The notes beneath the pieces are model-generated. The model ran no database searches. It saw only the letters and a list, made by a program, of their open reading frames with translations, and was not told where the DNA came from. Positions 1,408 to 53,982 of a stretch of DNA of 64,000 bases are shown piece by piece (position 1 is the first letter of the stretch; each line of letters begins with the position of its first letter). The stretch is taken from IMG/VR virus record IMGVR_UViG_3300020442_000005, positions 124,001 through 188,000 of that record; one strand, 5' to 3'. Both the position numbers and the translations under genes were made by a program.

Positions 1408-2011
1408 TGCCCTTAGATTATTACAGGAATGGAATGCTTTTTCATACGATAGAGAACAGATACTTGAGGAAAGAGCAACCAATGGCGGCCGGTATGTCAT
1501 GAGAGGCGTGCTGCAAAAATCCAACACGTTAAACCAAAACGGAAGAATATATCCGAAAGAAATATTAGAACGCGAAGTCCGAAATTATCAAAAGTTTATT
1601 GCAGAACGTAGAGCACTTGGTGAATTAGATCATCCAGAATCTTCAGTAGTTGAACTTAAAAACGCATCACACCTTGTAACTGAGGCTTACATGGAAGGGG
1701 ATATATGCTATGGAGTGGTTGAAATCCTTGATACACCGAGTGGAAAAATACTTAAATCACTTGTTGACGCAGGCGTTACTCTTGGTATTAGTTCTCGTGG
1801 TGTTGGGTCTACTCGACGTGAAGGTGACCACCAAGTGGTTCAAGATGATTTTCAGCTTATTTGTTGGGATTTTGTTAGTGAGCCATCTACTCCTGGGGCA
1901 TTCATGATGAAAGAAGGCCGTGAAATAAAAGAATCGGATTTAAAAAAATATTTTAATAAATCTGACAGAGTGGATAGAATACTTAACGATATTTTAGATT
2001 GGAGAAAATAA
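1400..2011 (+). CDS. Prohead core protease, T4 gp21-like
   Basis: Motifs NQNGRIYP, ALGELDHP, SHLVT, ILDTPSGKIL, GISSRGVGS and DFVSEPSTPGA; SD AAGGAG. Confidence 0.95.
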   Translation: MDNALRLLQEWNAFSYDREQILEERATNGGRYVMRGVLQKSNTLNQNGRIYPKEILEREVRNYQKFIAERRALGELDHPESSVVELKNASHLVTEAYMEGDICYGVVEILDTPSGKILKSLVDAGVTLGISSRGVGSTRREGDHQVVQDDFQLICWDFVSEPSTPGAFMMKEGREIKESDLKKYFNKSDRVDRILNDILDWRK

Positions 2012-2012
2012 A

Positions 2013-2381
2013 ATGGCTTATCAGGATATAGACCGAAGAAGGGAAGGCACAATTGGCTTTCCAAACGTTACTGGATCATTTGACCCAAACGCAATACCGT
2101 ATCAGTATGCGGGTACATACGGTTCTGAAACTCGTGTACAGTTTCCTTTTGAGTCCCAATGGATTCAGATTACTGCAATAACCTCCGATACTGTAAAGTA
2201 TGCTTTTCGTAATGGCGGTACAGGCGGCAGCAACTACGGAGCGGTTGGCGGTAATTCGACAACGCACATTATGTATATTAAAGCATCAGAAATATACGTT
2301 TTGAATGATGCAGCAATAACAGTGGGTATGTCACTTATTCCAAGCGGTACCAACACATACGATATGGACACAAGATACTAG
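2013..2381 (+). CDS. Hypothetical beta-rich virion protein
   Basis: 122 aa ORF with SD GGAG and a late-type motif ATACTTA at 1979. Confidence 0.55.
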   Translation: MAYQDIDRRREGTIGFPNVTGSFDPNAIPYQYAGTYGSETRVQFPFESQWIQITAITSDTVKYAFRNGGTGGSNYGAVGGNSTTHIMYIKASEIYVLNDAAITVGMSLIPSGTNTYDMDTRY

Positions 2382-2391
2382 GATGGAATAG

Positions 2392-2838
2392 ATGGCAAAA
2401 GTTAAACGTTCAGTTTTAAAACAGTTGATAAAAGAGTGTTTAGTTGAGATATTGGTTGAAGGAATTAGCGCTGACTCAAACATTGCTAATGCATTGGTCG
2501 AGGCGGCAACGCCTCGACCGTCTTCGAAAAATAACGATAATTATAAAAAGGAAGTCGAAAGAATTAATTCTCATCGCAAAAAGCTAGATGAAGTCAGGGT
2601 CAATGATCTGAACGAACAAATAATTAATAATGTTACGGAAGATCCAATGATGGCTGATATTTTTAGAGATACGGCCCAGACGACATTACAAGAACAAGGA
2701 ATGTCAAATAATGCCCGCGACGCTAGAAGGGTTCCAGCTGACGCTGCATCTCAGGCAGTTGCAAATAACGATCTAGAAGATTTGTTTGAGGGAGCTGGAA
2801 ACTGGGCGGCTCTAGCATTTAACAATAAGAGCAAGTAA
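2392..2838 (+). CDS. Putative internal head/prohead protein with a divergent leader (MAKVKRSVLKQLIKE...ILVE)
   Basis: The N-terminus resembles the shared MKITKRQLKRIIKE leader; the gene lies in the head module. Confidence 0.55.
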   Translation: MAKVKRSVLKQLIKECLVEILVEGISADSNIANALVEAATPRPSSKNNDNYKKEVERINSHRKKLDEVRVNDLNEQIINNVTEDPMMADIFRDTAQTTLQEQGMSNNARDARRVPADAASQAVANNDLEDLFEGAGNWAALAFNNKSK

Positions 2839-2897
2839 TAATCATTTTACGGCATACTTATTGTTGAGATTAATTTGCTAGTTTAGGAGATATTACC

Positions 2898-3173
2898 ATG
2901 GCAAGAAAAACAAAATCATTTGATCTAAAAGAGTTTATTTTACAAGAAGCCGCAAAACTTTCTGGCAAACCTACACCTGTCAGCAAAGTAAAGGCAAAAG
3001 AATATAAAGCTGGACAAGAAGCTTCTCAGCTTGAAAAGAATGTGAACCATGCCAAGCATCTTAAATTGAAAGAAGCTAAAATCAAGGCTGCTCACAAAAA
3101 ATTGGTACAAGAAATGAGACGTTTGCAAAAAAGAAAAGTTGCGTTAAAGAAAAAAATTATGAAGGACATATAA
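2898..3173 (+). CDS. Small Lys-rich coiled-coil head-module protein
   Basis: SD AGGAG; late-type motif at 2854; ILQE site near the N-terminus. Confidence 0.6.
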   Translation: MARKTKSFDLKEFILQEAAKLSGKPTPVSKVKAKEYKAGQEASQLEKNVNHAKHLKLKEAKIKAAHKKLVQEMRRLQKRKVALKKKIMKDI

Positions 3174-3199
3174 TTTAAATTGCAAACTGGAGAAAATAA

Positions 3200-4555: not shown

Positions 4556-4605
4556 TCCTTGCAAAATAACAACATAATTATGAAAAGATAACATGGAGAC
4601 AAATC

Positions 4606-6345
4606 ATGAGTGGTAATTTGTATGATCAAGCAATCGCAGACGCAAAAAAACTCAAAGAGTTGGCGGAAAAAAACGCTACCAATAAAATAATTGAGTCAAT
4701 CGCGCCAAAAATTAGATTGCTTATTGAGCAAGAAATCGACGATGAATTAGATTTAAGTGATTCTGATACCAGCGGTCTAGATGACGACATGGAAGATTTA
4801 GATGCAATGCTTGGTTCATCAACTGCTGCTGAATCACTAGGAATGACCGATATGGAGACTGCGGGTATGCCAATGCAGCCGGATCCGATCGAGCCTGTTC
4901 AGCAAATTAATTTAGAAGATGATGATGACGAAGACGAAAAAAACGTCACAGTAAATATTACAGTCGAGTCCAGACTTGACCGTAGAGCAAAAATGTTTAG
5001 AAAGAAAGCCGTAGACTTAGTAATTAAACTTAAGGAAGCAAAAAACACACGGCAAAAAAATAAAATCTTGCGTGAGTTATCAACAATAAAAGAAAGTTTA
5101 GTGCTTACAAATGAAGCTGATAAGAAACTCAACACAGAAATAAACGAAGTTCTTAAGGAGAGCAAAAAAATGTCAAAAAATAAAAAATCATGGATTAACG
5201 AAAACTCTTGGTGGTTGTTTGAAGCTGAAGAGGGTGAAGACGAATTAGATCTCGACCTTGGGGACGAAGACGAAGACGAGGAAGAAGGCGAAGAGGATAT
5301 CGACGTTGGCGCTATTAAGTCGGCTGTAGAAGATCTTGCTGGAGCTATCGGTCTTGAAGTTGCTGAGGGTGGCGAAGACGAAGAAGACGAAGACGAGGAT
5401 GAAGACGAAGAATTAGATCTTGATCTTGACGAAATGGATAAGATGTATGATGCTGATTATAACAATGAAGCTGATTATAACAACGAAGCTGATTATAACA
5501 ACGAAATGCATCACATGAAAGAAGCTGATAAAGATATGGATGAGGCTGATGACATGGATGAAGATGAAATGATTGAAATCAATGAATCTGCTATTCGTAG
5601 AGAACTTGCTCGCATGACTGGCGGCCGCTCTAATCGTCCAACTCGTAGATCACGTATGGCTGAATCACGTCGACGCCGTTTGGCAAGAAGACGCCGTCTT
5701 TCTGAAATGGGTGATCCATTATCAGCACAAGCAAACTTTGGTGGCTCAAGTGAAGTTATCGAAGTAGACGAAGAAACTTTAATTAATGCATTGGCAGAGG
5801 AACTCGGTAGTTCTGACGGTTTAGACCTCAATCCAGATGGAAGTGGAGATGCTTCAAAGATGGCTGGTCACTTTGGCGGAGGATCTGTTGGACGTCAACA
5901 AGTCTCCGAATCACGCCGTCGACGTCGTCAAAGAAGATTGTCTGAATCAAGACGACAACGCCAAGCTGATAATCAAAGAAGAGAACTCATGGAAGCTAAA
6001 AAAGCTGCAGCTGCAGCTAAGAAAGAACTCAATGAGTCAAATCTGTTCAATGCCAAATTACTTTACGTTAATAAGTTAATGCAACAACACGACTTGAACG
6101 CTAAGCAACAACGTGCAATTGTCGAGGCCCTAGATAATGCCAAGACGCAAAGAGAAGCTAAGCTATTATACACTAGCCTAACCGAAAGCCTTCGAAGAAG
6201 AGCTCAGTCTAAGACTGGAACTTCTAGTTTAAATGAAGGATTGGTACGCGGCGGTTCCGCAAGTAGCCCTGCCCGGTCATCAGCACCGGCTAAGTCAAGC
6301 ACGGGTTTGGATCGTTGGGCCACTTTGGCAGGTATCAAGAAGTAA
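4606..6345 (+). CDS. Prohead core scaffold protein (gp22-like)
   Basis: Directly upstream of the major capsid gene. It has AIADAKKLKELAE, long acidic tracts, many (L/I)-x-E sites, LNESNLFNAKLLYVNKL and a C-terminal RWATLAGI. Confidence 0.85.
   Translation: MSGNLYDQAIADAKKLKELAEKNATNKIIESIAPKIRLLIEQEIDDELDLSDSDTSGLDDDMEDLDAMLGSSTAAESLGMTDMETAGMPMQPDPIEPVQQINLEDDDDEDEKNVTVNITVESRLDRRAKMFRKKAVDLVIKLKEAKNTRQKNKILRELSTIKESLVLTNEADKKLNTEINEVLKESKKMSKNKKSWINENSWWLFEAEEGEDELDLDLGDEDEDEEEGEEDIDVGAIKSAVEDLAGAIGLEVAEGGEDEEDEDEDEDEELDLDLDEMDKMYDADYNNEADYNNEADYNNEMHHMKEADKDMDEADDMDEDEMIEINESAIRRELARMTGGRSNRPTRRSRMAESRRRRLARRRRLSEMGDPLSAQANFGGSSEVIEVDEETLINALAEELGSSDGLDLNPDGSGDASKMAGHFGGGSVGRQQVSESRRRRRQRRLSESRRQRQADNQRRELMEAKKAAAAAKKELNESNLFNAKLLYVNKLMQQHDLNAKQQRAIVEALDNAKTQREAKLLYTSLTESLRRRAQSKTGTSSLNEGLVRGGSASSPARSSAPAKSSTGLDRWATLAGIKK
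5452..5505 (+). repeat. Three 18-bp in-frame tandem repeats (GCTGATTATAACAAYGAA; ADYNNE x3) in the scaffold gene
   Basis: Read directly at 5452, 5470 and 5488. Confidence 0.95.
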
Positions 6346-6392
6346 TCAACTAATAATAAACAAGACAAATAAACTTTAAAGGAGTATTAATC

Positions 6393-8372
6393 ATGTCTTT
6401 TACATTAAATCAGTTGACCGAAGGTATCCGTCAGCGTCATATGGGCGCTCAACACCAACGGTTGACAGAAAAGTGGAACCGAACTGGTCTACTTAGAGGT
6501 CTTCAAGACCAATCACGCGAGAACATGGCTGTTCTTTTGGAAAACCAAGCCGCTCAAGTTCTTCGCGAAGCAAACACACTCGGTGGTACTACCAACGCAA
6601 CATCTGGAAACGCATCAGGTGATATCCGTGGATTCCAAAACATCGCATTTCCAATCGTTCGTCGTGTATTCGGTGGATTGGTTGCTAATGACCTTGTTTC
6701 TATCCAACCAATGTCTCTTCCAAGTGGACTTTTGTTCTACTTAGATTACACATACGGATCTTCAAACGGTGAAGTTGACACAGGCTCAGGTACTGATGCA
6801 GCTACTTATGCTGCAGGTCAATCGATCTACAACTCTCCAACTGGTAAATCAATCCAAGAAGGATCTTTTGCTGTTGGTGGTCAATACGATTTAGCTGGAT
6901 CTGGTTTCTCTCGTCGTCATGCTGAAGTTGAATTATCAGGTCACTCTGGTGAAACTACTGCTATTGAGTTTGGTATTATTAACCAGTCTGGTAAGTGGGA
7001 AAAAGGTAACATCATCACAGCTGTAGGATCATTGACCGGTGCTTCTGGTCGATTCATGCAGTTTGACCCACAGGTAACTACAGCTCTTGAAAACGGTACT
7101 ATCTCTCACGTACAATTTGCACGTGTTGATGTAGGCTACTTGTCAGGCTCTGGTTTCCAAGCTGATCTTACTCTTATCAAGGATGTAGCTCTTTCTATGG
7201 ATGACGCTTCGACTCTTGAAGAGGACGGTGTGGCTCCTGAAGTCGTACCTGCATCATTTCAAGCTGGAAACGGAATCCGTAACTTGCGTCGCTTGAATCA
7301 GTTGGTAACTATTCCATCTGCCACAAACGTTGTTTCTGCGGCTCCTTTAGCGACTACTAGCACATCAAATGCATTCGTTCTTATGACACTTATCGGTACA
7401 GGTTCTGCTTCTAGAACTGCAACTGGTGCTGGTGGTGCTCTTCACGGTGGTGACGCTGATGATGATTTGAACATATCATTTGTTCTTGGATCAAACCTTG
7501 ACGTTGATAACACAATCGGCGATGCACTTACTATCCCTGCTTTCGAGTCTAACTTGGCTGCAAACGGTGCTTCTGTATCTCCAGTTATTCCTGAAATCGA
7601 CATCAAGATTGAATCTTTGTCTGTAACTGCTGTAACTCGTAAGTTGCGTGCACGATGGTCTCCAGAGCTTGCTCAAGACTTGAACGCATACCACTCATTG
7701 GATGCAGAAGTTGAATTGACTCAGATCCTTTCTGAGCAAATCGCTCTTGAACTTGATCGCGAAATCTTGAACGACTTGTTGACACAAGCTAACGGTGCTA
7801 ACTTCTTCTGGTCACGTGCTCCTGGTAAGTTCGTAAACAAAGAAACTGGCGCTGCTGCTAACAAGGCTTCTTCATTGGCCGGCGGTCCTGCATTCACTGG
7901 TACAGTACGCGAATGGTACGAGACTTTGGTTGAAACCATCATCGACGCTTCTAACACAATCCATCGTAAGACTCTTCGTGGATCTGCTAACTTCATCGTG
8001 GTTGGACCTGATGTTGCTACAATCCTTGAAAGCTCTGTATTGTACAAGCCTGTTTACAGCCTTGACGGTGACGGACAAGTTGGTGCTGGAATGACTATCG
8101 GTGCTGAAAAAGTTGGTTCATTGTCTAACCGTTTCACAGTGTACAAAGATCCTTACTTCCCACGTAACAAGATTCTTATCGGTTACAAAGGTGGATCTTA
8201 CCTTGAAACTGGTTACGTCTATGCTCCATACGTACCTCTGATCGTAACTCCAACAATCTTTGCTCCTGAGGACTTCACTCCTCGTAAGGGTGTAATGACT
8301 CGTTACGGTAAGAAAATGGTTCGTTCGGACTTCTACGGAACTGTAACTTGTTTGGATATGAACATTATCTAA
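6393..8372 (+). CDS. Major capsid protein, T4 gp23-like, with a large central insertion
   Basis: Motifs LLENQ, FPIVRRVF, VSIQPMSLPSGLLFYL, RKLRARWSPELAQDLNAYH, LSEQIALELDREIL, YAPYVPL and PRKGVMTRYG. Confidence 0.97.
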   Translation: MSFTLNQLTEGIRQRHMGAQHQRLTEKWNRTGLLRGLQDQSRENMAVLLENQAAQVLREANTLGGTTNATSGNASGDIRGFQNIAFPIVRRVFGGLVANDLVSIQPMSLPSGLLFYLDYTYGSSNGEVDTGSGTDAATYAAGQSIYNSPTGKSIQEGSFAVGGQYDLAGSGFSRRHAEVELSGHSGETTAIEFGIINQSGKWEKGNIITAVGSLTGASGRFMQFDPQVTTALENGTISHVQFARVDVGYLSGSGFQADLTLIKDVALSMDDASTLEEDGVAPEVVPASFQAGNGIRNLRRLNQLVTIPSATNVVSAAPLATTSTSNAFVLMTLIGTGSASRTATGAGGALHGGDADDDLNISFVLGSNLDVDNTIGDALTIPAFESNLAANGASVSPVIPEIDIKIESLSVTAVTRKLRARWSPELAQDLNAYHSLDAEVELTQILSEQIALELDREILNDLLTQANGANFFWSRAPGKFVNKETGAAANKASSLAGGPAFTGTVREWYETLVETIIDASNTIHRKTLRGSANFIVVGPDVATILESSVLYKPVYSLDGDGQVGAGMTIGAEKVGSLSNRFTVYKDPYFPRNKILIGYKGGSYLETGYVYAPYVPLIVTPTIFAPEDFTPRKGVMTRYGKKMVRSDFYGTVTCLDMNII

Positions 8373-10386: not shown

Positions 10387-10399
10387 TCCTTAAATTAAT

Positions 10400-10428
10400 T
10401 TATAAAAACAAAATATATTTGGTATAAT
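10400..10428 (+). promoter_or_regulatory. Sigma70-like promoter TTATAA-N17-TATAAT
   Basis: Exact 17-bp spacing; same class as the 12 other sites in the window. Confidence 0.6.
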
Positions 10429-10447
10429 GTCTGCGTAACCAATAATT

Positions 10448-10509
10448 ATGATTAAGCCCCTAGCATGGACATAAGGCGGACCCCACACGCTCGCTAGGGA
10501 ATCATGTGG
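10448..10509 (+). ncRNA. Candidate structured 5' leader RNA
   Basis: Nested stems ATGATT/AATCAT and CCCTAGC/GCTAGGG; the GC-rich loop contains CCACA, complementary to downstream TGTGG. Confidence 0.45.
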
Positions 10510-10545
10510 ACAAGTAATCTCAAACAAACTTTAAGGAGAAAAATT

Positions 10546-11104: not shown

Positions 11105-11173
11105 TTAGATTTTATAAAAGTAAAACATACTTATAAAAGATAGCGTTTAATATACTCAGAACAGGAGAGAGAA

Positions 11174-11449: not shown

Positions 11450-11482
11450 TAATAATCACCAGCCATGTGTAAACAATACAGG

Positions 11483-11522
11483 ATATCGGCCATAATGGCC
11501 GATATTTTTTTTTATTTTTTTT
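11483..11522 (+). terminator. Rho-independent terminator
   Basis: Perfect inverted repeat ATATCGGCCAT-A-ATGGCCGATAT followed by long T runs. Confidence 0.85.
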
Positions 11523-11646
11523 AATTTAGGTTAATGGCGTGTGGCGTGTAAGTTTTATTGGTGAAAGTTTATCCTAATAGAAACTAGTTCAAGGTTGTTT
11601 GGGTTTTATACACATAATTATAAACGAACATGAACGGAGATAAAGC

Positions 11647-14631: not shown

Positions 14632-14674
14632 TCCAGAAAACATATTTAATAAAGAACAATAGGAGATTATTCAA

Positions 14675-21000: not shown

Positions 21001-21741
21001 GTCAATACGCAAAGAACAATCGAGAGATTTTCGGGTCGTGGATTAAGCAACTCTTTTGCAGCTGCATATTATCCAAACGTTTCATTGGCATTTCCTGAGC
21101 AAGGAGCTTTTGGAGGGCCTGGTCCTGTTAACTCATATGATCAGATGCCGCCTTCCATTGCAGCATTAGCGGCTTTTGCAAGAACTGATAGACTTGAAGG
21201 TGCATGGGGTACTCCTGCAGGATATGACAACGGTCGACCTTCTGCGATTACAAATACACAGACCCAACTAGTTGCAAGTGACACAAAAGAGTTATCTGTT
21301 AACTCAATCAACCCAATCGTTATTTATAACGATCAGGTAGCTCCTGTACTTTTGTCACCAACTGATCTCGGCGTACAGGGAACAGCAATTATTGCCGGCC
21401 AAAGAACGTTGTTAAATAAAAATTCTGCATTGTCCAGGCTTGATGTACGAAAGTTGATGGTCTATATCAGACGAAAAACTCGAGACATTGCTTACAACTA
21501 CATATTTGAACCGAACCAAAGCTCTGTTCTTACTAAATTCTCTCAGGAAGTTGAAAGCTTGCTAGAGACTTTGGCAACAGCTGGTGCAGTTCAGCAGTTT
21601 AGAGTTGTGATTGATGAAACAACGACTTCACAAGCTGACATAGAAAACAATACAGTTCGTGGTAAAGTTTTTGTTCAACCTTATAAGAGTACTGAAATAA
21701 TTGCAATAGATCTTAACATAAATAATACCGATCAGGCATAA
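18043..21741 (+). CDS. Tail sheath protein 2 (gp18-like paralog)
   Basis: Motifs AIIGTSQTGPAFVP, GGFDGLNIF, INPIV, GQRTL, ALSRLDVRKL and VQPYKSTEII. Confidence 0.9.
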   Translation: MLININEVDNSSPTVVETFAGIPAAIIGTSQTGPAFVPQLVNSEETFIETFGNISSEHFGSVAVRAWYSEAQANAGLVYLRVLGVGDGKKRTTNSRVANAGFVVGANNVRTEAEKALYSSVTVGSLQNNPYANETAASDGGAEATVVLADPVSPDTHNQTLIVTVGGSVVLTITTDDGTPYTATPTLSGATHTLGIAGTQNATSIFAALAHLLNQLDGFSATANGATDVTVTADAKADLTSDITLTGTYISGGHFSSTSTLGRRARVAPAAPGRMYFLSTIMSQSDGSTYLTDAGLTGYRDPILRAVLLVASGVQLQVSGWRPGDSGEQDLSGSSVAQDFLSGNLGQDAGNWIGASRGNGAVQLILNGLKDVDSRVINFNLDPDTSGYLDGINTEPDRFDELGHYLYAHYPVPSALAIAATASLGPNTAHGSIHSFVQGGETYYHNVLLTTGSAARNTYGESGYKPNYEGWEDRFSTPFTPWVISQPVGGVETKLFRLHALDDGQGTEDQFFAEISNIIYPADSADYATFDLTVRGYGDNVLNTDTTQASPTDNNRFIQSYQGLSLDPNADNYIAREIGDYHRYYNFDVNTNEQKLVLAGMYENQNRYFRVEVTDDVANGKISKSLVPFGFQGMHHLVTSGSNAMLSDIELGHTWNNAYTHTTALEGANAIGILSGNMAGIGMGMIVPPVPLRTKNKNDANSTTVYPWGVRFDRPGKGFLYTDTGDSVAKSLTGNTQGSVADQYVNNSNNLWASGKNLDLVRQLNKFYPSYSTSPMWVGDNAGVANSSEGAVLDSNEFNRNKFTLGRVYVATKTVNSVVQPDDTRWHQAHYIRDGVDPSTAGFRFLKATDLKETFATQNYTSFVLPFQGGFDGLNIFSDNKYKMNHWAAHFEQKNSSTQGGLLGSTVAAYRKGIEIIAEKTDVDINALAIPGQRSTFITDHAANKMEERFDAIYLMDIELCDQYGNGDDQIMFDGNPGESLDVSRVVNTQRTIERFSGRGLSNSFAAAYYPNVSLAFPEQGAFGGPGPVNSYDQMPPSIAALAAFARTDRLEGAWGTPAGYDNGRPSAITNTQTQLVASDTKELSVNSINPIVIYNDQVAPVLLSPTDLGVQGTAIIAGQRTLLNKNSALSRLDVRKLMVYIRRKTRDIAYNYIFEPNQSSVLTKFSQEVESLLETLATAGAVQQFRVVIDETTTSQADIENNTVRGKVFVQPYKSTEIIAIDLNINNTDQA

Positions 21742-21775
21742 TTAGAAATATACCAAACACTTAGGAGAAAATCAA

Positions 21776-22264
21776 ATGGCTGAAACATTAGACGTCGCGA
21801 GCATGCTTCCCAGGAAGTTCGAGCCAAAATACAATAATAGATGGGTTTTTGCCCTCGAAGGAATAGACGCTTACCTTATAAAGTCTGCAAATAGACCTTC
21901 AATTTCAATTTCACCTGTCACTATTGACTATATCAATTCACAAAGACACGTTGCTGGAAAAGCAACTTTTGGTGATCTTTCTGTCACGCTTCATGATCCT
22001 ATCGCTCCATCTGGCGCACAACAGGTCATGGAATGGTGTCGGACACACTTTGAATCAGTTTCAGGTCGTGCCGGTTACGCAGATTTCTATAAGAGAGATG
22101 CTCAGCTTAAGCTTATCGATCCGATCGGTACCGTCATCGAACTATGGGACATGAAAGGATGTTTCTTGACATCTGCTGATTTTGGTGGTGTGAGCTATGG
22201 TGGTCAAGACCCAATGGAAATATCATTGAGTATGAAATTTGACAATTGTGTTTTACAATACTAA
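21776..22264 (+). CDS. Tail tube protein (gp19-like)
   Basis: Motifs FEPKYNNRW, LHDPIAPSGAQQVMEW, GRAGYADFYKRD and ELWDMKGCF. Confidence 0.92.
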   Translation: MAETLDVASMLPRKFEPKYNNRWVFALEGIDAYLIKSANRPSISISPVTIDYINSQRHVAGKATFGDLSVTLHDPIAPSGAQQVMEWCRTHFESVSGRAGYADFYKRDAQLKLIDPIGTVIELWDMKGCFLTSADFGGVSYGGQDPMEISLSMKFDNCVLQY

Positions 22265-23893: not shown

Positions 23894-23922
23894 TTGTAGT
23901 TTTCAAATTTTCTTACTATAAT
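23894..23922 (+). promoter_or_regulatory. Sigma70-like promoter TTGTAG-N17-TATAAT
   Basis: 17-bp spacing; immediately upstream of the SD of 23942. Confidence 0.7.
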
Positions 23923-24183: not shown

Positions 24184-24555
24184 ATGATTGATTCTATGGA
24201 AGCTTCCATCGATGATTGTTGTTACTACTTATTGCGCAATGAAAAGCGTCCTAGGTTTGGTACAATCGTCAGAGTAATAAAAAGGGAATCAGCTGTTGTT
24301 GTAGTCGATGCACACAGTGGCGGCACTTACGTAGTGTGGGAAAAAAATGCAGCCTGGGACGAGAAAGAATTAAAAGGGCAGAAATGGGAAAAGCCGCATA
24401 ATTATATTCGTGAAATACCTGAGGAGGAGCAAGATGAAAAAGAGCCTGCTAAAAGAGTCAGTAATGTTCGTGACGGGAAGAAGAAAACAACTAAACGTAA
24501 ACGGACCAAAAGAAAAGGTACAAGCGTTTCTAAACGTTCTAGTCGCAAGTCGTGA
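24184..24555 (+). CDS. Hypothetical protein; SH3-like N-terminus and basic tail
   Basis: SD AGGAG; 123 aa. Confidence 0.55.
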   Translation: MIDSMEASIDDCCYYLLRNEKRPRFGTIVRVIKRESAVVVVDAHSGGTYVVWEKNAAWDEKELKGQKWEKPHNYIREIPEEEQDEKEPAKRVSNVRDGKKKTTKRKRTKRKGTSVSKRSSRKS

Positions 24556-24676
24556 TCTGTATGAAGCATTACATCAGGAAAATATTACCTTGACAGAAAT
24601 AAAAGAGCTTTCCGCAAACAAGGATGAGCTAGCCAAAAGATATAAAGACCAAACAGGGAAAGTTTGGCCACTGTAA
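24434..24676 (+). CDS. Hypothetical late protein (MKKSLLKES...)
   Basis: Start reassigned to ATG 24434 (SD GAGGAG); late-type motif at 24398; overlaps the upstream gene. Confidence 0.6.
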   Translation: MKKSLLKESVMFVTGRRKQLNVNGPKEKVQAFLNVLVASRDLYEALHQENITLTEIKELSANKDELAKRYKDQTGKVWPL

Positions 24677-24727
24677 ATTTTATGTTTTAAGATACTTATA
24701 CTATATTAAAGTTGGAGTATCTAACGT

Positions 24728-34975: not shown

Positions 34976-36028
34976 ATGATAGTATTTACAAACAAATTAT
35001 TTGGGACAGCAAATCACTTGATATATCGCGATGGTTACGAGTGGATTGATGATATCCCCACCGGCGCATTCGTTTATGACGGTATGCATAAATATTCAGT
35101 TTCAGAGTGGTTTAGTATCACAGGTAGCGCAGTGCCACTACTGGTCGACGAAAAATATAAAAAAATGGCTGATGAGCTAAATTTAGAAAACCCATGTTGG
35201 CATAAACTTTTAGGCAACGCATTTAAGAACAGTTTAAAATCAGTATCTGAATCAACAGCTAGAATGATTGAAAATTGTAGTTATAAAGATTATGAACAAA
35301 CTTGGCGTGAGTGTCAAGATTTCATGTGGTCTATGAAGCCCGTAAAAATAAACAGGGCAAGATACGCATCATTAAAAGCGTTAAACGTTAACTTACCAGG
35401 ATTCAATCCTGTCACCGGTTCTCTTGATCCTGTACTGTATGACAGAAAAACAAAGACTGGACGTCTAAGAGTAATCCAGGGTCCTTCGGTTTTAACAATA
35501 AAGTCTGAACATCGAAACATAATAAAAGGATGTCGGCAGATAGATTTTAAAAACATGGAACCGCGATTGTTGTTGGCTTTTCTAGGTAAAGAGATAGAGG
35601 GTGACCTGTACAGCAAAATACAAAAGGATCTGAACCTGAAAGGTGATCGATCGTATGTAAAAGTATCAATTATTTCTTCTTTATATGGTTCTCGTGTAGT
35701 ACCTGAAATATCAAAATATTTTGCTATACCATTTTGGATAGAAGAGCTTGAAAAAGATATAAACGACGGTTGGATAAGAAATTACTTTGGTCGACCCATC
35801 AATGTCGAGAATGTAACTGGCCATCATCTTTTAGCTCTTTGGTTACAATCTTCGGCCGCTGACGCAGCACTATTAGCGTTCAGTAAATTTTTCAAATCAC
35901 GTCCGGACTTAACTCCCCATTGGCTTATTCACGATGCATGTATATTTAGTGGCGATGGCGATATACCAGAATACTTATATATAAACGACGATATAAAACT
36001 ACCAATTGATTGTACGGTGATAAAATGA
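34976..36028 (+). CDS. Minimal family A DNA polymerase-like protein
   Basis: TKTGRL, motif A IDFKNMEPR, motif B RSYVKVSIISSLYG, LQSSAAD and motif C IHDA; only 350 aa. Confidence 0.75.
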   Translation: MIVFTNKLFGTANHLIYRDGYEWIDDIPTGAFVYDGMHKYSVSEWFSITGSAVPLLVDEKYKKMADELNLENPCWHKLLGNAFKNSLKSVSESTARMIENCSYKDYEQTWRECQDFMWSMKPVKINRARYASLKALNVNLPGFNPVTGSLDPVLYDRKTKTGRLRVIQGPSVLTIKSEHRNIIKGCRQIDFKNMEPRLLLAFLGKEIEGDLYSKIQKDLNLKGDRSYVKVSIISSLYGSRVVPEISKYFAIPFWIEELEKDINDGWIRNYFGRPINVENVTGHHLLALWLQSSAADAALLAFSKFFKSRPDLTPHWLIHDACIFSGDGDIPEYLYINDDIKLPIDCTVIK

Positions 36029-36579
36029 CACTTCTTGATTTACTAGTTGAAAAAAGTTCAAAGAAAAAAGACGGCTATCGAGTTGTCCCGGGCCCGGCAA
36101 GGGCACTATTAGCAGGTCGGCCAAGTAAAAACATTAAAGATTTAAAGTTGCGTGTTGCATCAGACCCAAGTGGACTGCTAGACGATTTAGGAATCGAACC
36201 CAACTCTATAAGTGAAAACGACGATTCAATTTTATTTTTACATGAAGCGTTTGAGCAAATGATATCAAATGCGACCGGTAACGAAAAAGCACGGCTACTG
36301 CAAGATTTATTTGATCAGCCGGAATTAGTTCAGTCTCGGCTTACGGGAAGAAAAGCAATTTTAATAAAGTTATCGGGTGAAGGCATCAGGTTAGCGCAAG
36401 CTGATGCACGTCGTTTTTTGCGGACATACGCCTTCTGGTTTTCTTCTACGACAGAAGCACTTCAAATTACAAATAGCCAGCTAAATCTTAATCTTACTGT
36501 TAACGTAAAATTCCAATACATAGAGGGCGAAAACGCTATCTTAGTATTTAAATCACGAAGAGCGTGGACCAGCTTGTAA
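36025..36579 (+). CDS. Hypothetical late protein (MTLLDLLVE...)
   Basis: Start reassigned to the ATGA overlap at 36025; late-type motif at 35971. Confidence 0.55.
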   Translation: MTLLDLLVEKSSKKKDGYRVVPGPARALLAGRPSKNIKDLKLRVASDPSGLLDDLGIEPNSISENDDSILFLHEAFEQMISNATGNEKARLLQDLFDQPELVQSRLTGRKAILIKLSGEGIRLAQADARRFLRTYAFWFSSTTEALQITNSQLNLNLTVNVKFQYIEGENAILVFKSRRAWTSL

Positions 36580-36602
36580 ATAATATTACGTCGGGATATA
36601 AT
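36574..36602 (+). promoter_or_regulatory. Sigma70-like promoter TTGTAA-N17-TATAAT
   Basis: 17-bp spacing; upstream of SD AAGGAGGT. Confidence 0.75.
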
Positions 36603-37160: not shown

Positions 37161-37204
37161 CATAATTATAACTGATAAACTGTAGTAAGATCAAGGAGAA
37201 ACTA

Positions 37205-38783: not shown

Positions 38784-38811
38784 GAAAGGGAGATTTATTC
38801 TCCCTTTCTTT
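38784..38811 (+). terminator. Terminator hairpin GAAAGGGAGA-TTTAT-TCTCCCTTTC
   Basis: Perfect 10-bp stem followed by Ts. Confidence 0.8.
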
Positions 38812-38838
38812 GTAAATAGAGCTTTGTATGAGTAATAT
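38810..38838 (+). promoter_or_regulatory. Promoter TTGTAA-N17-TAATAT
   Basis: 17-bp spacing; upstream of the recombinase. Confidence 0.7.
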
Positions 38839-45062: not shown

Positions 45063-45683
45063 ATGCATTGGACAACCAACATCGATCCAAAAGTAAGAGA
45101 ACTAGAATTACGACACAACCCTGTGATGATACGAGTTAATAAATTCACAGAGGAAAGCGCCGCTGAATTTGCAACAAAAATGGCTATGGCACATAACACT
45201 GGACAATCTGTTATCCCGGTCGTTATTGATTCATATGGCGGACAGGTATACAGTCTTATGAGTATGATAAGTTCTATAAATGCCTCAGAAATCCCGGTAG
45301 CAACTATTGTAGAAGGAAAAGCAATGTCCTGTGGAGTAATATTGTTTTCATGCGGCCACGAAGGATTAAGATTTGTCACTCCAGAAGCTACTTTGATGAT
45401 TCACGATGTATCTTCGGGTGCGTTCGGAAAAAACGAGGAAATTCAAGCATCCGCAAAAGAAACAAACCGACTCAATAAAATGATTTATACTATTCTTGCT
45501 GATAACTGCAAAAAACCACGTGATTATTTTACGAAAGAAGTAAAAAGAAGAGGCCGCGCGGATTGGTATGTAACTCCAAACAAAGCTGTGAAAATGGGTT
45601 TAGCAGATCACGTGGGGCTTCCTAAACTTCAAATTGACGTCGACGTACAAATTAATTTAGCAATCCCAGATAAAGATGCATAA
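45063..45683 (+). CDS. clpP: ClpP-family protease
   Basis: Motifs IDSYGG, AMSCG (catalytic Ser), LMIHD (His) and DWY...AVKMGLAD. Confidence 0.88.
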   Translation: MHWTTNIDPKVRELELRHNPVMIRVNKFTEESAAEFATKMAMAHNTGQSVIPVVIDSYGGQVYSLMSMISSINASEIPVATIVEGKAMSCGVILFSCGHEGLRFVTPEATLMIHDVSSGAFGKNEEIQASAKETNRLNKMIYTILADNCKKPRDYFTKEVKRRGRADWYVTPNKAVKMGLADHVGLPKLQIDVDVQINLAIPDKDA

Positions 45684-45706
45684 TTAATAACAATGGAGTT
45701 ATTCGT

Positions 45707-46171
45707 ATGTCGACATCAATTTTAAAATGGGTTCACATGCACAAAGCATACGTGGAGTGGTTTCACTCCGCGCACTTGTTATCAAAGGGATCAAGTTTTG
45801 CTGGTGACCATGTAAATCTTTATGGAAAAATATACCAAGAAGCTTTTGAGCAATACGACGGTATTATAGAACGTGTGATTGGTATTACAAACAACGAAGA
45901 TTGCGCCTGTCCATCTAGTATCAATATGGGTGCATTGGGTATTTTACAAAAGTACCCATCTCCATCAAACGTTCCTGCCTTGAATATTGCTACGTCTGCA
46001 TTGCAGCTCAACAAAGACTATTGTCATTTTTTGAATGACCTTGTTTTAAATCTTAGGCAATCAGGAAAAATTACTTTGGGAACAGAAGATTTAATCGCTG
46101 GAACATGTAATACTATTGAAGGGTATACTTATTTGTTGCAGCAACGCGTCAAAGAATCAATTGGAGTTTAA
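45707..46171 (+). CDS. Dps/ferritin-like protein
   Basis: HSAHLLSKGSSFAGDH...Y...YDGIIER matches the Dps ferroxidase signature; late-type motif at 45680. Confidence 0.75.
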   Translation: MSTSILKWVHMHKAYVEWFHSAHLLSKGSSFAGDHVNLYGKIYQEAFEQYDGIIERVIGITNNEDCACPSSINMGALGILQKYPSPSNVPALNIATSALQLNKDYCHFLNDLVLNLRQSGKITLGTEDLIAGTCNTIEGYTYLLQQRVKESIGV

Positions 46172-51760: not shown

Positions 51761-51768
51761 AATAATAC

Positions 51769-51797
51769 GTATAAATACTCTTACTAATGGTTATAAT
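51769..51797 (+). promoter_or_regulatory. Promoter GTATAA-N17-TATAAT
   Basis: 17-bp spacing; upstream of the methyltransferase. Confidence 0.65.
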
Positions 51798-51820
51798 AGA
51801 GAAAATCATTAGGAGTTTTT

Positions 51821-52786
51821 ATGATCAATTATCTTTATCGGCCAACAAACCTGCAAGTCTCCAGTAAAATCGTTCATCAAGGCGATAGGGTGCCATTTAA
51901 GTGGGCCGGCGCTAAAAATAGGATGTTTAAAAAATACATTTCAACTGGATTCTTTCCGGCAAAGCAACCAAAAATATTTGTTGACATGTTTGCAGGTACT
52001 GGTGCGGTTGGACGTTGGATAGCTCAAAATTATCCAAATACGACGGTAGTTCTAAACGAAACTTGTGGTGAATTAGTTGGTATGTATAAACAGCTTAAGA
52101 CCAAGAATTATAATGCGTTCATTGCAGCATATAGTAAGCATGTTAAAGCATATGCAAGTTATTCTACTGTTGAAGATCGTAAAAAATATTATTACGGTGT
52201 TAGAAACCAATACGCGTTATCCTATCAAAACATGACTCCAGCAGAAGAAGCTGCAGCTCTTTTCTATATGCTACAAACGGGCTTCAATGGAATATGGCAG
52301 ACATCAGACAACTTTAACAATAGATACGCGTCGCCCGCTGGACTAATGACTTGGAAGCCTTCTGGCGATCTATTTGATATTAATAGAATAAAAAAATATT
52401 CAGAGTTTATTGATCGCTGTGTATTACTTAATGATGACTTTGAAGCAACTTCGTGCTTTATGGGTTCCGATACCTGGTTTTATGCTGATCCACCATATCG
52501 TGTTTCAAAAGCAAAATATGCATCAGCAGGTGATTTTACAAACAACGATCAAATTAGATTATGTAATTTTCTTAATGATGCACACAAGGCAAATGATATG
52601 TGTTCAATGAGCAACAGAGAAGATTCAGATAAGCAAATTGGAAAAGAAGTTGGTACAATAACTAAGGGTTGGTTTGCTGATAAATTTAACGATGACTGGA
52701 ATGTTTCGTATTATGATGTTAAATACACAGCTGGCCGACACAACTTAGGTCAAAAAGGAAAAGAAGTTCTTATTAAAAATTATTAA
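51821..52786 (+). CDS. DNA adenine methyltransferase, Dam/D12 class
   Basis: Motifs PFKWAGAK, DMFAGTG, GFNG and YADPPY. Confidence 0.92.
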   Translation: MINYLYRPTNLQVSSKIVHQGDRVPFKWAGAKNRMFKKYISTGFFPAKQPKIFVDMFAGTGAVGRWIAQNYPNTTVVLNETCGELVGMYKQLKTKNYNAFIAAYSKHVKAYASYSTVEDRKKYYYGVRNQYALSYQNMTPAEEAAALFYMLQTGFNGIWQTSDNFNNRYASPAGLMTWKPSGDLFDINRIKKYSEFIDRCVLLNDDFEATSCFMGSDTWFYADPPYRVSKAKYASAGDFTNNDQIRLCNFLNDAHKANDMCSMSNREDSDKQIGKEVGTITKGWFADKFNDDWNVSYYDVKYTAGRHNLGQKGKEVLIKNY

Positions 52787-52797
52787 ATGGAGTCAAA

Positions 52798-53550
52798 GTG
52801 ATATTTGATCTTTACGGTGATGGAATAGGCACAGTAGAATACGTACAACACATGGGCGAAGACATAACTATTGTGAACAGCGCAAGAGTTAGCTTTGGAA
52901 AACACAAGGAGACGATGGATGAAAAAGACAGAAAACTTATCAGATATCTCATCAAGCACAGACACACATCAACCCTCGAACACAATATTGCTACGTTTAG
53001 GTTTGTGGTACCTCTGTATGTGCGTAGCCAGCACCATCGTCATAGAACTTGGTCTTATAACGAAATTAGTCGTCGATATACTGCAGAAAATTTGAGATTT
53101 TATGAGCCACAAAAATTTAGAACACAACACAAATCAAACCGACAAGCCTCCAATCATGATGAGTTGGATCCGATTATGGGATACTTTGAAGATGGCGGAC
53201 CTAACTACGCAAGCGCATCTATTAGAAGTCATCATCGCAACAGTGTATGTTTATACAACTCATTAATGGAAAAGGGCGTATGCAGGGAACAGGCAAGAGG
53301 CGTTTTGCCACAGAACATGTACACCGAATATTATGGAACAGCTAACTTAAATAATCTTCTAAAATTTTGCGGGTTGCGTCTTCATGATGGTGCGCAGCTT
53401 GAAATACAAAAAGTTGCTGAGGGTATAATTGGCATATGCAAAAATCTTTGGCCTATCACAATCGAAGCATACATTGCTAGTTTGGAAGACCGAGCACTAG
53501 CTGAAAGGCTAGAAAATATCGAGATTATTAAGGCCAAACCGCATAATTAG
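52798..53550 (+). CDS. thyX: Flavin-dependent thymidylate synthase
   Basis: Motifs IVNSARVSF, HTSTLEH, RHRTWSYNEISRRY, EQARGVLP and AQLEI. Confidence 0.95.
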   Translation: MIFDLYGDGIGTVEYVQHMGEDITIVNSARVSFGKHKETMDEKDRKLIRYLIKHRHTSTLEHNIATFRFVVPLYVRSQHHRHRTWSYNEISRRYTAENLRFYEPQKFRTQHKSNRQASNHDELDPIMGYFEDGGPNYASASIRSHHRNSVCLYNSLMEKGVCREQARGVLPQNMYTEYYGTANLNNLLKFCGLRLHDGAQLEIQKVAEGIIGICKNLWPITIEAYIASLEDRALAERLENIEIIKAKPHN

Positions 53551-53608
53551 AAATAGAGTTTTCTTTTGTTGTGCGTTGCGTATCTACATTTATTTTAGGG
53601 GATATCCT

Positions 53609-53932
53609 ATGACCGGTGATAATAATGGATGGAATGAATATTCACGTATGGTTTTAAAAGAGCTCGAAGTATTGGCCGCTGGAATCAATGGCTTAAAAAC
53701 AGAAATCGAAGGTTTAAAACGTGAGATTACAGAGATGAGAGCAAGAGAAGACAAAGTTTCAGAATTGGTTGATTGGAAAAAAAGAGTCGATGAAGTCGCG
53801 TCACCATCTCAATTGAGAGACTTACAGGACCAAGTATCAGCTCTTCAAGACTTTAAAATAAAGGCAACCACAGCATTTATTGCAGCCCAGATGGTCGTTG
53901 CAGGTGCTTTTACATTGTTAAAGCTAATCTGA
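53609..53932 (+). CDS. Coiled-coil protein with a C-terminal TM segment (possible lysis/holin-like)
   Basis: Start reassigned to ATG 53609; C-terminal hydrophobic AFIAAQMVVAGAFTLL; late-type motif at 53543. Confidence 0.5.
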   Translation: MTGDNNGWNEYSRMVLKELEVLAAGINGLKTEIEGLKREITEMRAREDKVSELVDWKKRVDEVASPSQLRDLQDQVSALQDFKIKATTAFIAAQMVVAGAFTLLKLI

Positions 53933-53982
53933 CACATACTTATATACTGAAATGCTAAATCGATATTTTTAAAGGAGCTATC

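What the first reader, a model, noticed from the sequence alone, without database searches (positions are those of the whole stretch)
1979..53942. Putative late-promoter motif ATA(A/C/T)TTA marks structural genes and the leader genes embedded in the replication region
Seen: the heptamer starts at 1979, 2854, 4574, 11127, 11614, 14642, 21738, 24398, 24692, 35971, 37162, 45680, 46125 and 53936, each 27-54 nt upstream of a start codon. More distant copies lie at 10442, 47661 and 53543. It precedes the scaffold, neck, sheath, tube and tape measure genes, and I did not see it before replication enzymes. It differs from the T4 late TATAAATA. Inference: a -10-only promoter for a phage late sigma factor. 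Its presence before 37205, 46173 and 53983 independently supports those leader genes being virion components.
Basis: partly seen in the sequence, partly recalled or inferred. Interest (0 to 1): 0.62.

Follow-up and report, generated by a model that had tools for sequence, protein, structure and literature searches.

The report
Late-gene promoter motif of marine jumbo phage
The short sequence ATA-N-TTA that sits about 30-45 bases before the virion genes of this 273-kb marine T4-related phage is a real, strand-specific signal kept at the same places in hundreds of related phages, and is most likely the core of a late promoter read by a phage-encoded gp55-like sigma factor.

Summary
All 17 coordinates are correct. 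The raw window count is near chance (64 vs 49±7). Position and strand are not: in the -70..-14 zone of all 325 + strand genes the heptamer occurs 54 times against 14.5±3.9 under an AT-matched Markov null. ATAATTAT is the top 8-mer of all at -21..-62. ATACTTA outnumbers its reverse complement 14 to 3.

The refined consensus is R-C-ATA-(A/C/t)-TTA-T-A, with a purine 12 nt after the first A (likely transcript start). No -35 box is conserved in this genome.

In about 275 related marine contigs and one further near-complete genome, ATANTTA is again the top upstream word. It is kept before orthologues of scaffold-like, adaptor, sheath, tube and tape-measure genes (73-92%). It is absent before UvsX, DnaB, NrdA and DNA polymerase (0%). 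Those carry a second, bipartite class, TTGTAAA-N16-TATAAT.

The genome encodes no RNA polymerase that I could detect. It has one gp55-like sigma (G000:72783-73523; best structural match T4 gp55, Z 11.3) with an extra sigma4-like domain.

Verdict: a real promoter-like element, probably late. It is a new variant of the T4-type late promoter. No TSS or timing data exist. The inference that the "leader" genes are virion parts does not follow.

The parts
2854..2860 (+). ATACTTA (ggcATACTTAtt), 44 nt before g2898 (91 aa), intergenic
   Evidence: Orthologue upstreams carry ATAATTA before the likely true start in 3 of 4 cases; the automatic count gave 1 of 4 because of start misassignment.
4574..4580 (+). 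ATAATTA (aacATAATTAtg), 32 nt before the acidic scaffold-like gene 4606-6345. This gene is followed by the major head gene 6393-8372, which has no motif of its own.
   Evidence: 6 of 7 orthologue upstreams have ATANTTA; the MCP itself 2 of 64. g4606 is 23% D+E. An RNA-library contig of a relative bridges the 4606/MCP junction (weak).
11127..11133 (+). ATACTTA (aacATACTTAta), 47 nt before g11174 (91 aa)
   Evidence: Intergenic. 2 of 2 orthologue upstreams.
11480..11518 (+). Intrinsic terminator (13-bp stem, T-run) between g11174 and the next motif
   Evidence: The order terminator, motif, RBS, ATG argues that 11614 restarts transcription.
11614..11620 (+). ATAATTA (cacATAATTAta), 33 nt before the head-tail adaptor/neck gene 11647-12819
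   Evidence: phrog_211. 36 of 49 non-redundant orthologue upstreams keep ATANTTA while the flanks diverge.
14642..14648 (+). ATATTTA (aacATATTTAat), 33 nt before sheath gene 14675-18022
   Evidence: phrog_23. 61 of 66 orthologue upstreams.
21738..21744 (+). ATAATTA (ggcATAATTAga), 38 nt before tube gene 21776-22264; overlaps the stop of sheath-2
   Evidence: phrog_4542. 47 of 54 orthologue upstreams.
24398..24404 (+). ATAATTA (cgcATAATTAta) inside the 3' part of g24184, 36 nt before ATG 24434 of an overlapping 80-aa ORF (24434-24676)
   Evidence: ATANTTA lies 305-344 nt upstream of the TMP start in 11 of 14 relatives.
24692..24698 (+). ATACTTA (aagATACTTAta), 36 nt before the tape-measure-like gene 24728-27841
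   Evidence: phrog_1686. 9 of 12 orthologue upstreams.
35971..35977 (+). ATACTTA (agaATACTTAta) in the 3' end of g34976, 54 nt before g36025
   Evidence: 3 of 3 orthologues. It lies in coding sequence, so its conservation is not independent of the protein.
37162..37168 (+). ATAATTA (agcATAATTAta), 43 nt before g37205 (113 aa, unknown), inside the replication region
   Evidence: 3 of 3 orthologue upstreams. No family hit for the protein.
45680..45686 (+). ATAATTA (tgcATAATTAat), 27 nt before g45707 (154 aa); also likely serves 46173
   Evidence: 7 of 7 orthologue upstreams. Weak phrog_3636 'DNA binding protein' hit.
53543..53549 (+). ATAATTA (cgcATAATTAga), 66 nt before g53609 (107 aa)
   Evidence: 9 of 12 orthologue upstreams have ATA(C/T/A)TTA at 55-75 nt.
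53936..53942 (+). ATACTTA (cacATACTTAta), 47 nt before g53983 (98 aa). Fits the extended consensus, but conservation is not shown.
   Evidence: 0 of 2 orthologue upstreams.
46125..46131 (+). ATACTTA (ggtATACTTAtt) inside g45707, 48 nt before 46173 (leader-family gene). Status open.
   Evidence: No orthologues recovered. Lacks the C at -1.
1979..1985 (+). ATACTTA (agaATACTTAac) in the 3' end of g1400, 34 nt before g2013. Status open, poor fit to the flanks.
   Evidence: No orthologues recovered.
36575..36602 (+). Contrast class: bipartite TGTAAA-N16-TATAAT before g36624
38811..38838 (+). Contrast class: TGTAAA-N16-TAATAT before UvsX (38872), just after a terminator
   Evidence: The pattern is present in 14 of 21 orthologue upstreams, which have ATANTTA in 0 of 21.
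59780..59807 (+). Contrast class: TGTAAA-N16-TAGAAT before the DNA polymerase gene 59843
   Evidence: Relatives show TTGTAAA-N16-TACAAT/TAAAAT. ATANTTA in 0 of 16.

Best explanation
ATANTTA, here mostly R-C-ATA-(A/C)-TTA-T-A, is the core -10-like element of a phage-specific promoter class. It starts the late transcription units: terminase, portal, scaffold+capsid, neck, sheath, tube, tape measure, baseplate and some small unknown genes.

Proposed mechanism. The phage encodes no RNA polymerase that I could detect, so host core polymerase is probably redirected. The likely agent is the phage's divergent sigma factor (246 aa, G000:72783-73523). Its N-terminal domain is gp55/sigma2-like and would read the motif. 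Transcripts would start at a purine about 12 nt after the first A of the motif. Replication genes use a different, bipartite promoter (TTGTAAA-N16-TATAAT), read by host sigma70 or by the phage's RpoD-like sigma.

Shown: the motif's reality, orientation, position and conservation; its gene-class specificity; the presence of the sigma.
Inferred: promoter activity, late timing, and which sigma reads it.
For: Enrichment and strand bias.

No conserved -35 box in this genome.

Geometry: purine at +12, with C in only 1 of 100 and 1 of 65 sites in relatives and 42 of 55 purines here.

Replication in other genomes:
- In 57 non-identical related loci the top upstream 7-mers of all are ATAGTTA 65/100, ATACTTA 35/65, ATATTTA 45/137 and ATAATTA 31/105. 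Reverse complements give 0/31, 1/25, 7/85 and 12/87.
- In a second near-complete genome, G001, ATATTTA is the top word (18/33, p=4.5e-14, reverse complement 0/9).
- The cultured Flavobacterium phage immuto has (A/C)TATTTAT(A)A before its terminase, portal and sheath genes.

Orthologue test, which is bimodal:
- Motif kept: scaffold-like 6/7, adaptor 36/49, sheath 61/66, tube 47/54, TMP 9/12, g45707 7/7, g53609 9/12.
- Motif absent: MCP 2/64, UvsX 0/21, DnaB 0/15, NrdA 0/23, DNA polymerase 0/16.

Transcription-unit layout: terminators are followed by the motif before the next gene.

Gene function outside the window: the motif precedes the portal, baseplate-wedge and terminase operons. TATAAT-class sites precede helicase, exonuclease, SbcCD, methyltransferase, thymidylate synthase and UvsX. 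In the structural block, strict motif sites are 16 of 37 against 2 of 17 for the bipartite class (Fisher p=0.03).

Sigma: phrog_234 'late sigma transcription factor' is the only PHROG hit and the only six-frame hit in the genome (E 2.7e-4). T4 gp55 is the only PDB sequence hit of the 9-sequence profile (E 0.73). AF2 model pLDDT 80.7. The top VIA-align match is T4 gp55 7d7c_F (Z 11.3, rmsd 3.9, 119 of 137 residues), and all other top matches are sigma factors.

No RNAP Pfam hits.
Against: - No transcript 5' ends or expression timing exist. The only RNA runs holding related sequence are kept as contigs and cover capsid genes of relatives.
- The sigma-to-gp55 sequence link is weak: E 0.0025, 2.7e-4 and 0.73. 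It was lost with a deeper profile. Helical folds score high easily.
- The motif also precedes non-structural genes: a DHH phosphoesterase, an endonuclease, a RuvC-like resolvase and possibly the RpoD-like sigma gene.
- Part of the ATAATTA hits are TATAAT+TA and cannot be told from the bipartite class.
- No clamp (gp45 or DnaN) or gp33 homologue was found. The record is only 82% complete.
- Orthologue counts include inherited sites, so they are not independent events.
Confidence: 0.62

Rival explanations
1. The motif is only a variant -10 box of ordinary host sigma70 promoters, or of promoters read by the phage's RpoD-like sigma at G000:206827-207528. On this view it is the same class as the TATAAT sites, lacks a good -35, and involves no dedicated late sigma.
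For: ATAATTA overlaps TATAAT in about a quarter of upstream hits. Read as xATANT, the motif keeps A at hexamer position 2 and T at position 6. A few sites were flagged by the generic sigma70 scan with weak -35 boxes: 21713-21742, 45657-45684 and 53519-53547. A full RpoD-like sigma is encoded.
Against: - The invariant TTA tail, the preferred C rather than T before the motif, and free choice at the 4th base differ from the TATAAT[A/G]TA sites. Those sites come with TTGTAAA at a fixed 16-nt spacing.
- The two classes separate by gene function and stay separate in relatives.
- In immuto the first A is often C (CTATTTA), which breaks the xATANT reading.
- The generic sigma70 pattern is not enriched in the window: 61 vs 49, 50 vs 54 and 60 vs 55.
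Confidence: 0.14
2. The motif is a binding site for a phage regulator (repressor or activator) or an RNA-level signal in the 5' leader (processing site or translational operator), and not the promoter itself.
For: Orientation-specific, gene-proximal motifs can also act in RNA. Distance to the start codon is fairly narrow, mostly 25-50 nt. Several copies lie inside upstream coding sequence where read-through transcripts would carry them: 1979, 24398, 35971 and 46125.
Against: - The distance to the RBS and ATG varies from 22 to 75 nt, too loose for a translational operator.
- No second conserved box lies downstream that could serve as the real -10.
- A purine preference at a fixed +12 fits a start site.
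- The motif follows terminators, where a new start is needed.
- A -35-like GACATTT at a fixed 14-nt spacing in one clade is typical promoter architecture.
Confidence: 0.1
3. The motif is a promoter for an unrecognised phage-encoded RNA polymerase, as in phiKZ- or AR9-like jumbo phages.
For: Jumbo phages often carry very divergent multisubunit polymerases that Pfam models can miss. Many large ORFs here have no family hit. The record is 82% complete.
Against: There are no hits to the Rpb1, Rpb2 or single-subunit polymerase families. The virion module is T4-like. Two sigma-type proteins are encoded, which implies use of a bacterial core enzyme.
Confidence: 0.04
4. Chance clustering of an AT-rich word in AT-rich intergenic DNA.
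For: The whole-window count is close to expectation: 64 vs 49+-7.
Against: There is excess over an AT-matched null, strand bias, and independent recovery as the top word in relatives and in a second genome.
Confidence: 0.01

Closest known systems
T4-type late promoter (TATAAATA) read by gp55 with gp33 and the gp45 clamp (review PMC2988020)
   Same: - A short A/T-only box about one helical turn before the start, with no -35 conservation in this genome.
- It lies before virion genes of a phage with a T4-like capsid, sheath, tube, portal and UvsX.
- The candidate reader has a gp55-like sigma2 domain.
- Written side by side, xATAAATA and CATA(A/C)TTA share 6 of 8 positions.
   Different: - The sequence differs: T instead of A at the 6th place, a free 5th place, C preferred at the 1st. 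TATAAATA itself is not enriched.
- The sigma carries an extra sigma4-like C-terminal domain.
- No gp33 or gp45 homologue was found.
- The replicative polymerase is not the T4 type (phrog_405).
- One clade of relatives adds a -35-like GACATTT.
Two-domain alternative sigma factors (group 3/4, ECF-like) and their bipartite promoters; phage examples such as SPO1 gp28 and gp33/34 (own knowledge)
   Same: The model aligns over both domains with SigB, SigH, SigE, SigW and sigma32. In the ATAGTTA clade the promoter is bipartite with a fixed spacer. The logic is a temporal cascade, with a phage sigma encoded at the end of a unit driven by the other promoter class.
   Different: In the focal genome no -35 box is conserved. 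Pfam Sigma70_r2 scores only 13.8 bits, below the cut-off. The motif matches no described consensus that I know of.
Late promoters of T4-like cyanophages (NATAAATA; own knowledge, cf. PMC2984593)
   Same: Marine T4-related myoviruses. The capsid protein of this phage is 32-34% identical to theirs.
   Different: They keep the T4 box and a short gp55. This lineage has changed both the box and the sigma architecture.

Membership tests
T4-type late promoter system (gp55/gp33/gp45) | 8-bp TATAAATA box at about -10 | tested here: not met
   TATAAATA occurs 2 times in upstream zones vs 2.15 expected. The enriched word is ATANTTA.
T4-type late promoter system (gp55/gp33/gp45) | No sequence conservation at -35 | tested here: inconclusive
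   Met in the focal genome, where no position upstream of -2 exceeds 0.22 bit. In the ATAGTTA clade of relatives GACATTT is conserved at -21..-15 (G 49/65, T 53/65).
T4-type late promoter system (gp55/gp33/gp45) | A gp55 homologue (sigma2-like, no sigma4) | tested here: inconclusive
   One ORF only (G000:72783-73523) hits phrog_234 (E 2.7e-4). Its model matches 7d7c_F at Z 11.3. However, it is 246 aa with a C-terminal domain that aligns to sigma4 of two-domain sigmas.
T4-type late promoter system (gp55/gp33/gp45) | gp33 co-activator | not tested
   Only the ORF next to the sigma gene (122 aa) was scanned, with no relevant PHROG hit. No genome-wide search was made.
T4-type late promoter system (gp55/gp33/gp45) | gp45-type sliding clamp as activator | tested here: not met
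   There was no PF02916 hit and no DnaN C-domain (PF02768) hit in the 273-kb record. The record is 82% complete, so absence is not proven.
T4-type late promoter system (gp55/gp33/gp45) | Sites lie before late (virion) genes and give late transcripts starting about 6-7 nt downstream | not testable with these tools
   Placement before virion genes is met. Start sites and timing cannot be read from contig-only RNA runs. The purine at +12 is only suggestive.
sigma70-family sigma factor (for the 246-aa protein) | sigma2 domain | tested here: met
   Pfam r2 scores 13.8 bits, below the cut-off. The fold matches sigma2 crystal fragments: 4lup_A Z 10.0, rmsd 2.2, 91 of 91 residues; 4x8k_A Z 9.3; 7d7c_F Z 11.3.
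sigma70-family sigma factor (for the 246-aa protein) | sigma4 helix-turn-helix domain | tested here: inconclusive
   Alignments to SigB, sigma70, sigmaS and sigmaE run to residues 240-246 but with a large overall rmsd. There was no Pfam r4 hit. The domain was not folded alone.

The most novel reading that the evidence does not exclude
This marine lineage keeps an 'unsplit' form of the T4 late-transcription sigma. It is a single protein with a gp55-like sigma2 domain that reads ATANTTA, plus a DNA-reading sigma4-like domain that reads GACATTT in some clades and has lost its box in others. It works without a gp33/gp45-type clamp activator. That would make it a living intermediate between ordinary sigma70-family factors and the split gp55+gp33 system of T4.
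Probability: 0.25. Interest if true: 0.65.

Novelty: new variant of a known kind. Interest (0 to 1): 0.45.

Why it matters
These phages are abundant in marine metagenomes. One search found 3,960 homologues of the sigma alone. Related contigs reach 305 kb, and none of the close relatives is cultured.

A defined late-promoter word, together with the contrasting TTGTAAA-N16-TATAAT class, gives three practical things:
- A cheap way to split their many unknown genes into temporal classes.
- A way to delimit transcription units.
- A way to correct gene starts, for example the hidden ORF at 24434.

It also shows that the T4-type late box is not fixed across the T4-related radiation and may have co-changed with the sigma's architecture. 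The cultured Flavobacterium phage immuto carries the same kind of box, so the idea can be tested at the bench.

Tried and rejected
- A free EM motif search of width 30 on all upstream zones drifted to coding periodicity and was dropped. Anchored profiles and exhaustive k-mer ranking were used instead.
- Megablast of 8 kb against GenBank phages found nothing.
- phmmer of the sigma candidate against PDB found nothing. The 9-sequence profile gave only gp55 at E 0.73. The 33-sequence profile lost it and gave one designed protein at E 0.16.
- Foldseek E-values were all above 0.001, although nearly all hits were sigma factors.
- RNA evidence: two marine metatranscriptome runs hold 6% of the words. 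They are kept as contigs at 90-97% identity over the capsid gene of relatives, so they give no 5' ends, strand or timing.
- The generic sigma70 and terminator scan is not enriched for promoters.
- No tRNA and no Rfam family in the window.
- Pfam RNAP families, the gp45 N-domain and the DnaN C-domain gave no hit.
- Counting motif variants in the short flanks of sigma loci L100-L108, to look for sigma/motif co-variation, was uninformative.
- An upstream TTTTAT seen by eye near several window sites has variable spacing (4-12 nt), so it was not accepted as an element.

Full report
**What the window is.** The window is bases 124,001-188,000 of a 273,025-bp IMG/VR virus record. CheckV puts it at 82% complete, GC is 0.40, and almost all genes lie on the + strand. 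DNA runs that hold the sequence are marine metagenomes.

The capsid protein is gp23-like. Its nearest named relatives are Flavobacterium phage immuto (44%), Microcystis phage Mel-JY01, Rhodothermus phage RM378 and cyanomyoviruses.

- major head protein 6393
- adaptor/neck 11647
- two sheath paralogues, 14675 and 18043
- tube 21776
- TMP-like protein 24728
- then UvsX 38872, DnaB 41128, NrdA 42533 and DNA polymerase 59843

Upstream of the window lie baseplate-wedge genes (76.1-78.5 kb), SbcCD, large terminase and portal. G000 76-160 kb is therefore one long virion block.

**The observation.** All 17 coordinates are right, and the 14 proximal copies are 27-54 nt from a start codon. The raw count in the window is not impressive (64 vs 49±7). 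Placement is.

- Of 164 + strand copies in the genome, 43 start 20-49 nt before a gene start.
- Against a first-order Markov null trained on the same AT-rich upstream zones, the heptamer occurs 54 times vs 14.5±3.9 genome-wide and 14 times vs 3.8±1.9 in the window. CATA[AC]TTA occurs 18 times vs 1.45. No simulation reached the observed values.
- Ranking every 8-mer by enrichment at -21..-62 puts ATAATTAT first (16 of 36, p=4e-12) and ATACTTAT seventh (9 of 15).
- Among intergenic words only Shine-Dalgarno words score higher.
- The non-palindromic form is oriented: ATACTTA 14, TAAGTAT 3.
- T4's TATAAATA is at expectation.

**Anatomy.** Anchored profiles show no conserved position upstream of -2 in this genome. 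The 12 window sites with comparative support give R(-2) C(-1) ATA (A/C/t) TTA T A A A, and a purine at +12 counted from the first A. In relatives C is almost excluded at +12 (1 of 100 and 1 of 65). That is the expected look of a start site 5-6 nt after the box.

**A second class.** TATAAT followed by A or G is also enriched (27 vs 10.8). It comes with (T)TGTAAA exactly 16 nt upstream. It precedes a helicase, an exonuclease, SbcCD, a methyltransferase, thymidylate synthase, UvsX and the DNA polymerase.

Some ATAATTA hits are simply TATAAT+TA of this class, for example G000 201,820. These are ambiguous.

**Comparative test.** Tube, capsid, UvsX and g55027 proteins recovered about 275 related IMG/VR loci.

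In 57 non-identical tube loci (686 kb) the four top-ranked 7-mers at -21..-62 are the four versions of ATANTTA:

| word | upstream / all copies | reverse complement |
|---|---|---|
| ATAGTTA | 65/100 | 0/31 |
| ATACTTA | 35/65 | 1/25 |
| ATATTTA | 45/137 | 7/85 |
| ATAATTA | 31/105 | 12/87 |

For each window gene I took non-redundant orthologue upstreams and asked whether ATANTTA lies at -20..-75. The result is bimodal.

| motif kept | fraction | motif absent | fraction |
|---|---|---|---|
| scaffold-like g4606 | 6/7 | MCP | 2/64 |
| g11174 | 2/2 | g12830 | 1/56 |
| adaptor | 36/49 | g2392 | 1/31 |
| sheath | 61/66 | UvsX | 0/21 |
| tube | 47/54 | g40264 | 0/18 |
| TMP | 9/12 | DnaB | 0/15 |
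| g36025 | 3/3 | NrdA | 0/23 |
| g37205 | 3/3 | endolysin | 0/13 |
| g45707 | 7/7 | DNA polymerase | 0/16 |
| g53609 | 9/12 | | |

The flanks of the conserved heptamer are otherwise unalignable. UvsX and polymerase upstreams instead keep terminator, then TTGTA(A/C)A, 16 nt, then a TAnAAT-like hexamer.

The in-gene copy at 24398 is also kept, in 11 of 14 relatives. It points to a hidden 80-aa ORF at 24434.

A second near-complete genome (G001, 280,913 bp, GC 0.45) gives ATATTTA as the top word of all (18 of 33, p=4.5e-14, reverse complement 0 of 9). GTATAAT is a separate enriched word there.

The cultured phage immuto shows (A/C)TATTTAT(A)A before its terminase, portal, sheath and other virion genes.

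These counts include inherited sites, so they show purifying selection on the word, not independent origins.

**Why a promoter.**
- Of 14 intergenic terminators, 6 are followed before the next gene by ATANTTA alone and 5 by the bipartite pattern (two of these also contain an ATANTTA), while 3 have neither. An example is the terminator at 11480-11518, then the motif at 11614, then the adaptor gene.
- No further conserved box lies downstream that could be the real -10.
- The distance to the RBS is loose.
- A purine sits at a fixed +12.
- In the ATAGTTA clade a GACATTT lies exactly 14 nt upstream.

An RNA-level signal or an operator is not excluded but fits these facts less well.

**Who reads it.**
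- Pfam models of multisubunit and single-subunit RNA polymerases find nothing.
- Two sigma-type genes exist. One is RpoD-like (G000:206,827-207,528; r1.2, r2, r3; phrog_351 at 3e-52).
- The other is a 246-aa ORF at G000:72,783-73,523. It lies at the end of a unit that starts with a TATAAT-class site at 69,195, and 2.6 kb before the first motif-driven baseplate gene.
- This ORF is the only phrog_234 ('late sigma transcription factor', the gp55 family) match in the genome (E 0.0025 and 2.7e-4).
- It has 3,960 homologues, mostly unnamed. A few are called sigma-24 family by JGI.
- Its AF2 model has pLDDT 80.7.
- Foldseek returns almost only sigma factors.
- VIA-align ranks T4 gp55 in the late open complex first (7d7c_F: Z 11.3, rmsd 3.9 Å, 119 of 137 residues, model residues 21-158). 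Two-domain sigmas align on to residue 246.
- The sequence link to gp55 alone is marginal.

This pairing is inference.

**What does not follow.** The motif is enriched in the virion block. Strict sites number 16 of 37 there, in 20% of the genes, against 2 of 17 for the other class (Fisher p=0.03). It is not confined to that block. It also precedes a DHH phosphoesterase, an endonuclease and a RuvC-like resolvase. Late genes need not be structural.

The 'leader' genes belong to a family of at least 13 paralogues starting MKI(S/T)KRQL(R/K)(R/K)II. Only three have a motif of their own. For 46125 no orthologue was found. For 53936 two orthologues lack it. Only 37162 is conserved. The motif therefore does not independently show that these proteins are in the virion.

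**Known or new.** The logic is that of T4 late transcription (PMC2988020). The box, the sigma architecture and the apparent lack of gp45 and gp33 differ.

[quoted passage not shown] I did not verify that this phage belongs to that lineage. Full-text searches returned no paper describing this motif.

I file it as a new variant of a known kind.

Noticed in passing
window 36575-36602, 38811-38838, 59780-59807 (also 23917-23922, 51792-51797, 54991-54996): A second promoter-like class, (T)TGTAAA-N16-TATAAT-like, lies before replication and nucleotide-metabolism genes. It often comes directly after a terminator and is conserved in relatives before UvsX and the DNA polymerase.
   Followed up: partly
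window 58120-58151; also before genes starting at G000 21544, 22123, 245238, 246242, 247485 and 264642: A roughly 30-nt near-identical element, GGTAAATTATATATGTAAGGAGAAACC, several copies of which run straight into a TTG start codon (window 58149; G000 246242, 264642). It looks like a sub-type of the bipartite class (GTGAA-N16-TAAATT) with a shared leader, possibly an early-gene cassette.
   Followed up: no
related loci, e.g. L050, L078, L040, L043 upstream of sheath, adaptor and tube: In the clade that uses ATAGTTA, a GACATTT box lies at -21..-15, which is a 14-nt spacer (G 49/65, T 53/65). It is only a faint echo in other clades and in the focal genome.
   Followed up: partly
window 8445, 9186, 9592, 46173, 46574, 47242, 50310; G000 9992, 10252, 10561, 33054, 237907, 239732: A paralogous family of small proteins shares the N-terminus MKI(S/T)KRQL(R/K)(R/K)II(K/R)EE. 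There are at least 13 copies. Three follow the capsid gene directly. It may be a targeting or pro-peptide leader; this was not tested.
   Followed up: partly
window 24184-24676: An 80-aa ORF (24434-24676) overlaps the 3' end of g24184 in another frame, just before the tape-measure-like gene. It has its own conserved ATANTTA and a strong RBS. The arrangement recalls tail-chaperone pairs.
   Followed up: partly
G000:206827-207528 and 207548-207820 (L003:1399-2100 and 2120-2392): The RpoD-like sigma ends inside region 4.1. The next 90-aa ORF reads like region 4.2 (…YREIAEKM…ATARNYFIRAMKKI…). This may be a split sigma, a frameshift or a pseudogene. An ATACTTA lies 26 nt before its start, and a GroEL-like gene lies just upstream.
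   Followed up: no
G000:73529-73897 (L004:2019-2387): The 122-aa acidic ORF right after the gp55-like sigma gene ends in …SSDDLFNEIGG. The sigma family itself ends in a conserved …DIL/DIF tail. Both loosely resemble clamp-binding tails. No gp33 or clamp homologue was found.
   Followed up: no
window 14675-18022 and 18043-21741: There are two tandem sheath paralogues of 1115 and 1232 aa, about twice the usual length. Only the C-terminal 400 aa match sheath families.
   Followed up: no
window 5262-5411: An acidic low-complexity stretch of the scaffold-like gene attracts very high contig depth from a DNA run (about 9,000). This is a mapping artefact of simple sequence, not a copy-number signal.
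   Followed up: no
window 10387-10545: A 160-nt non-coding gap carries TGgTATAAT (10420-10428) and ATAATTA (10442), followed by a GC-rich stretch. There is no tRNA or Rfam hit. A small RNA is possible.
   Followed up: partly
window 6010-6946 and 7550-8245: Contigs from two marine metatranscriptome runs (X19, X20) match these parts at 90-97% identity. Capsid genes of close relatives are therefore present in RNA libraries. One contig bridges the scaffold/capsid junction.
   Followed up: yes
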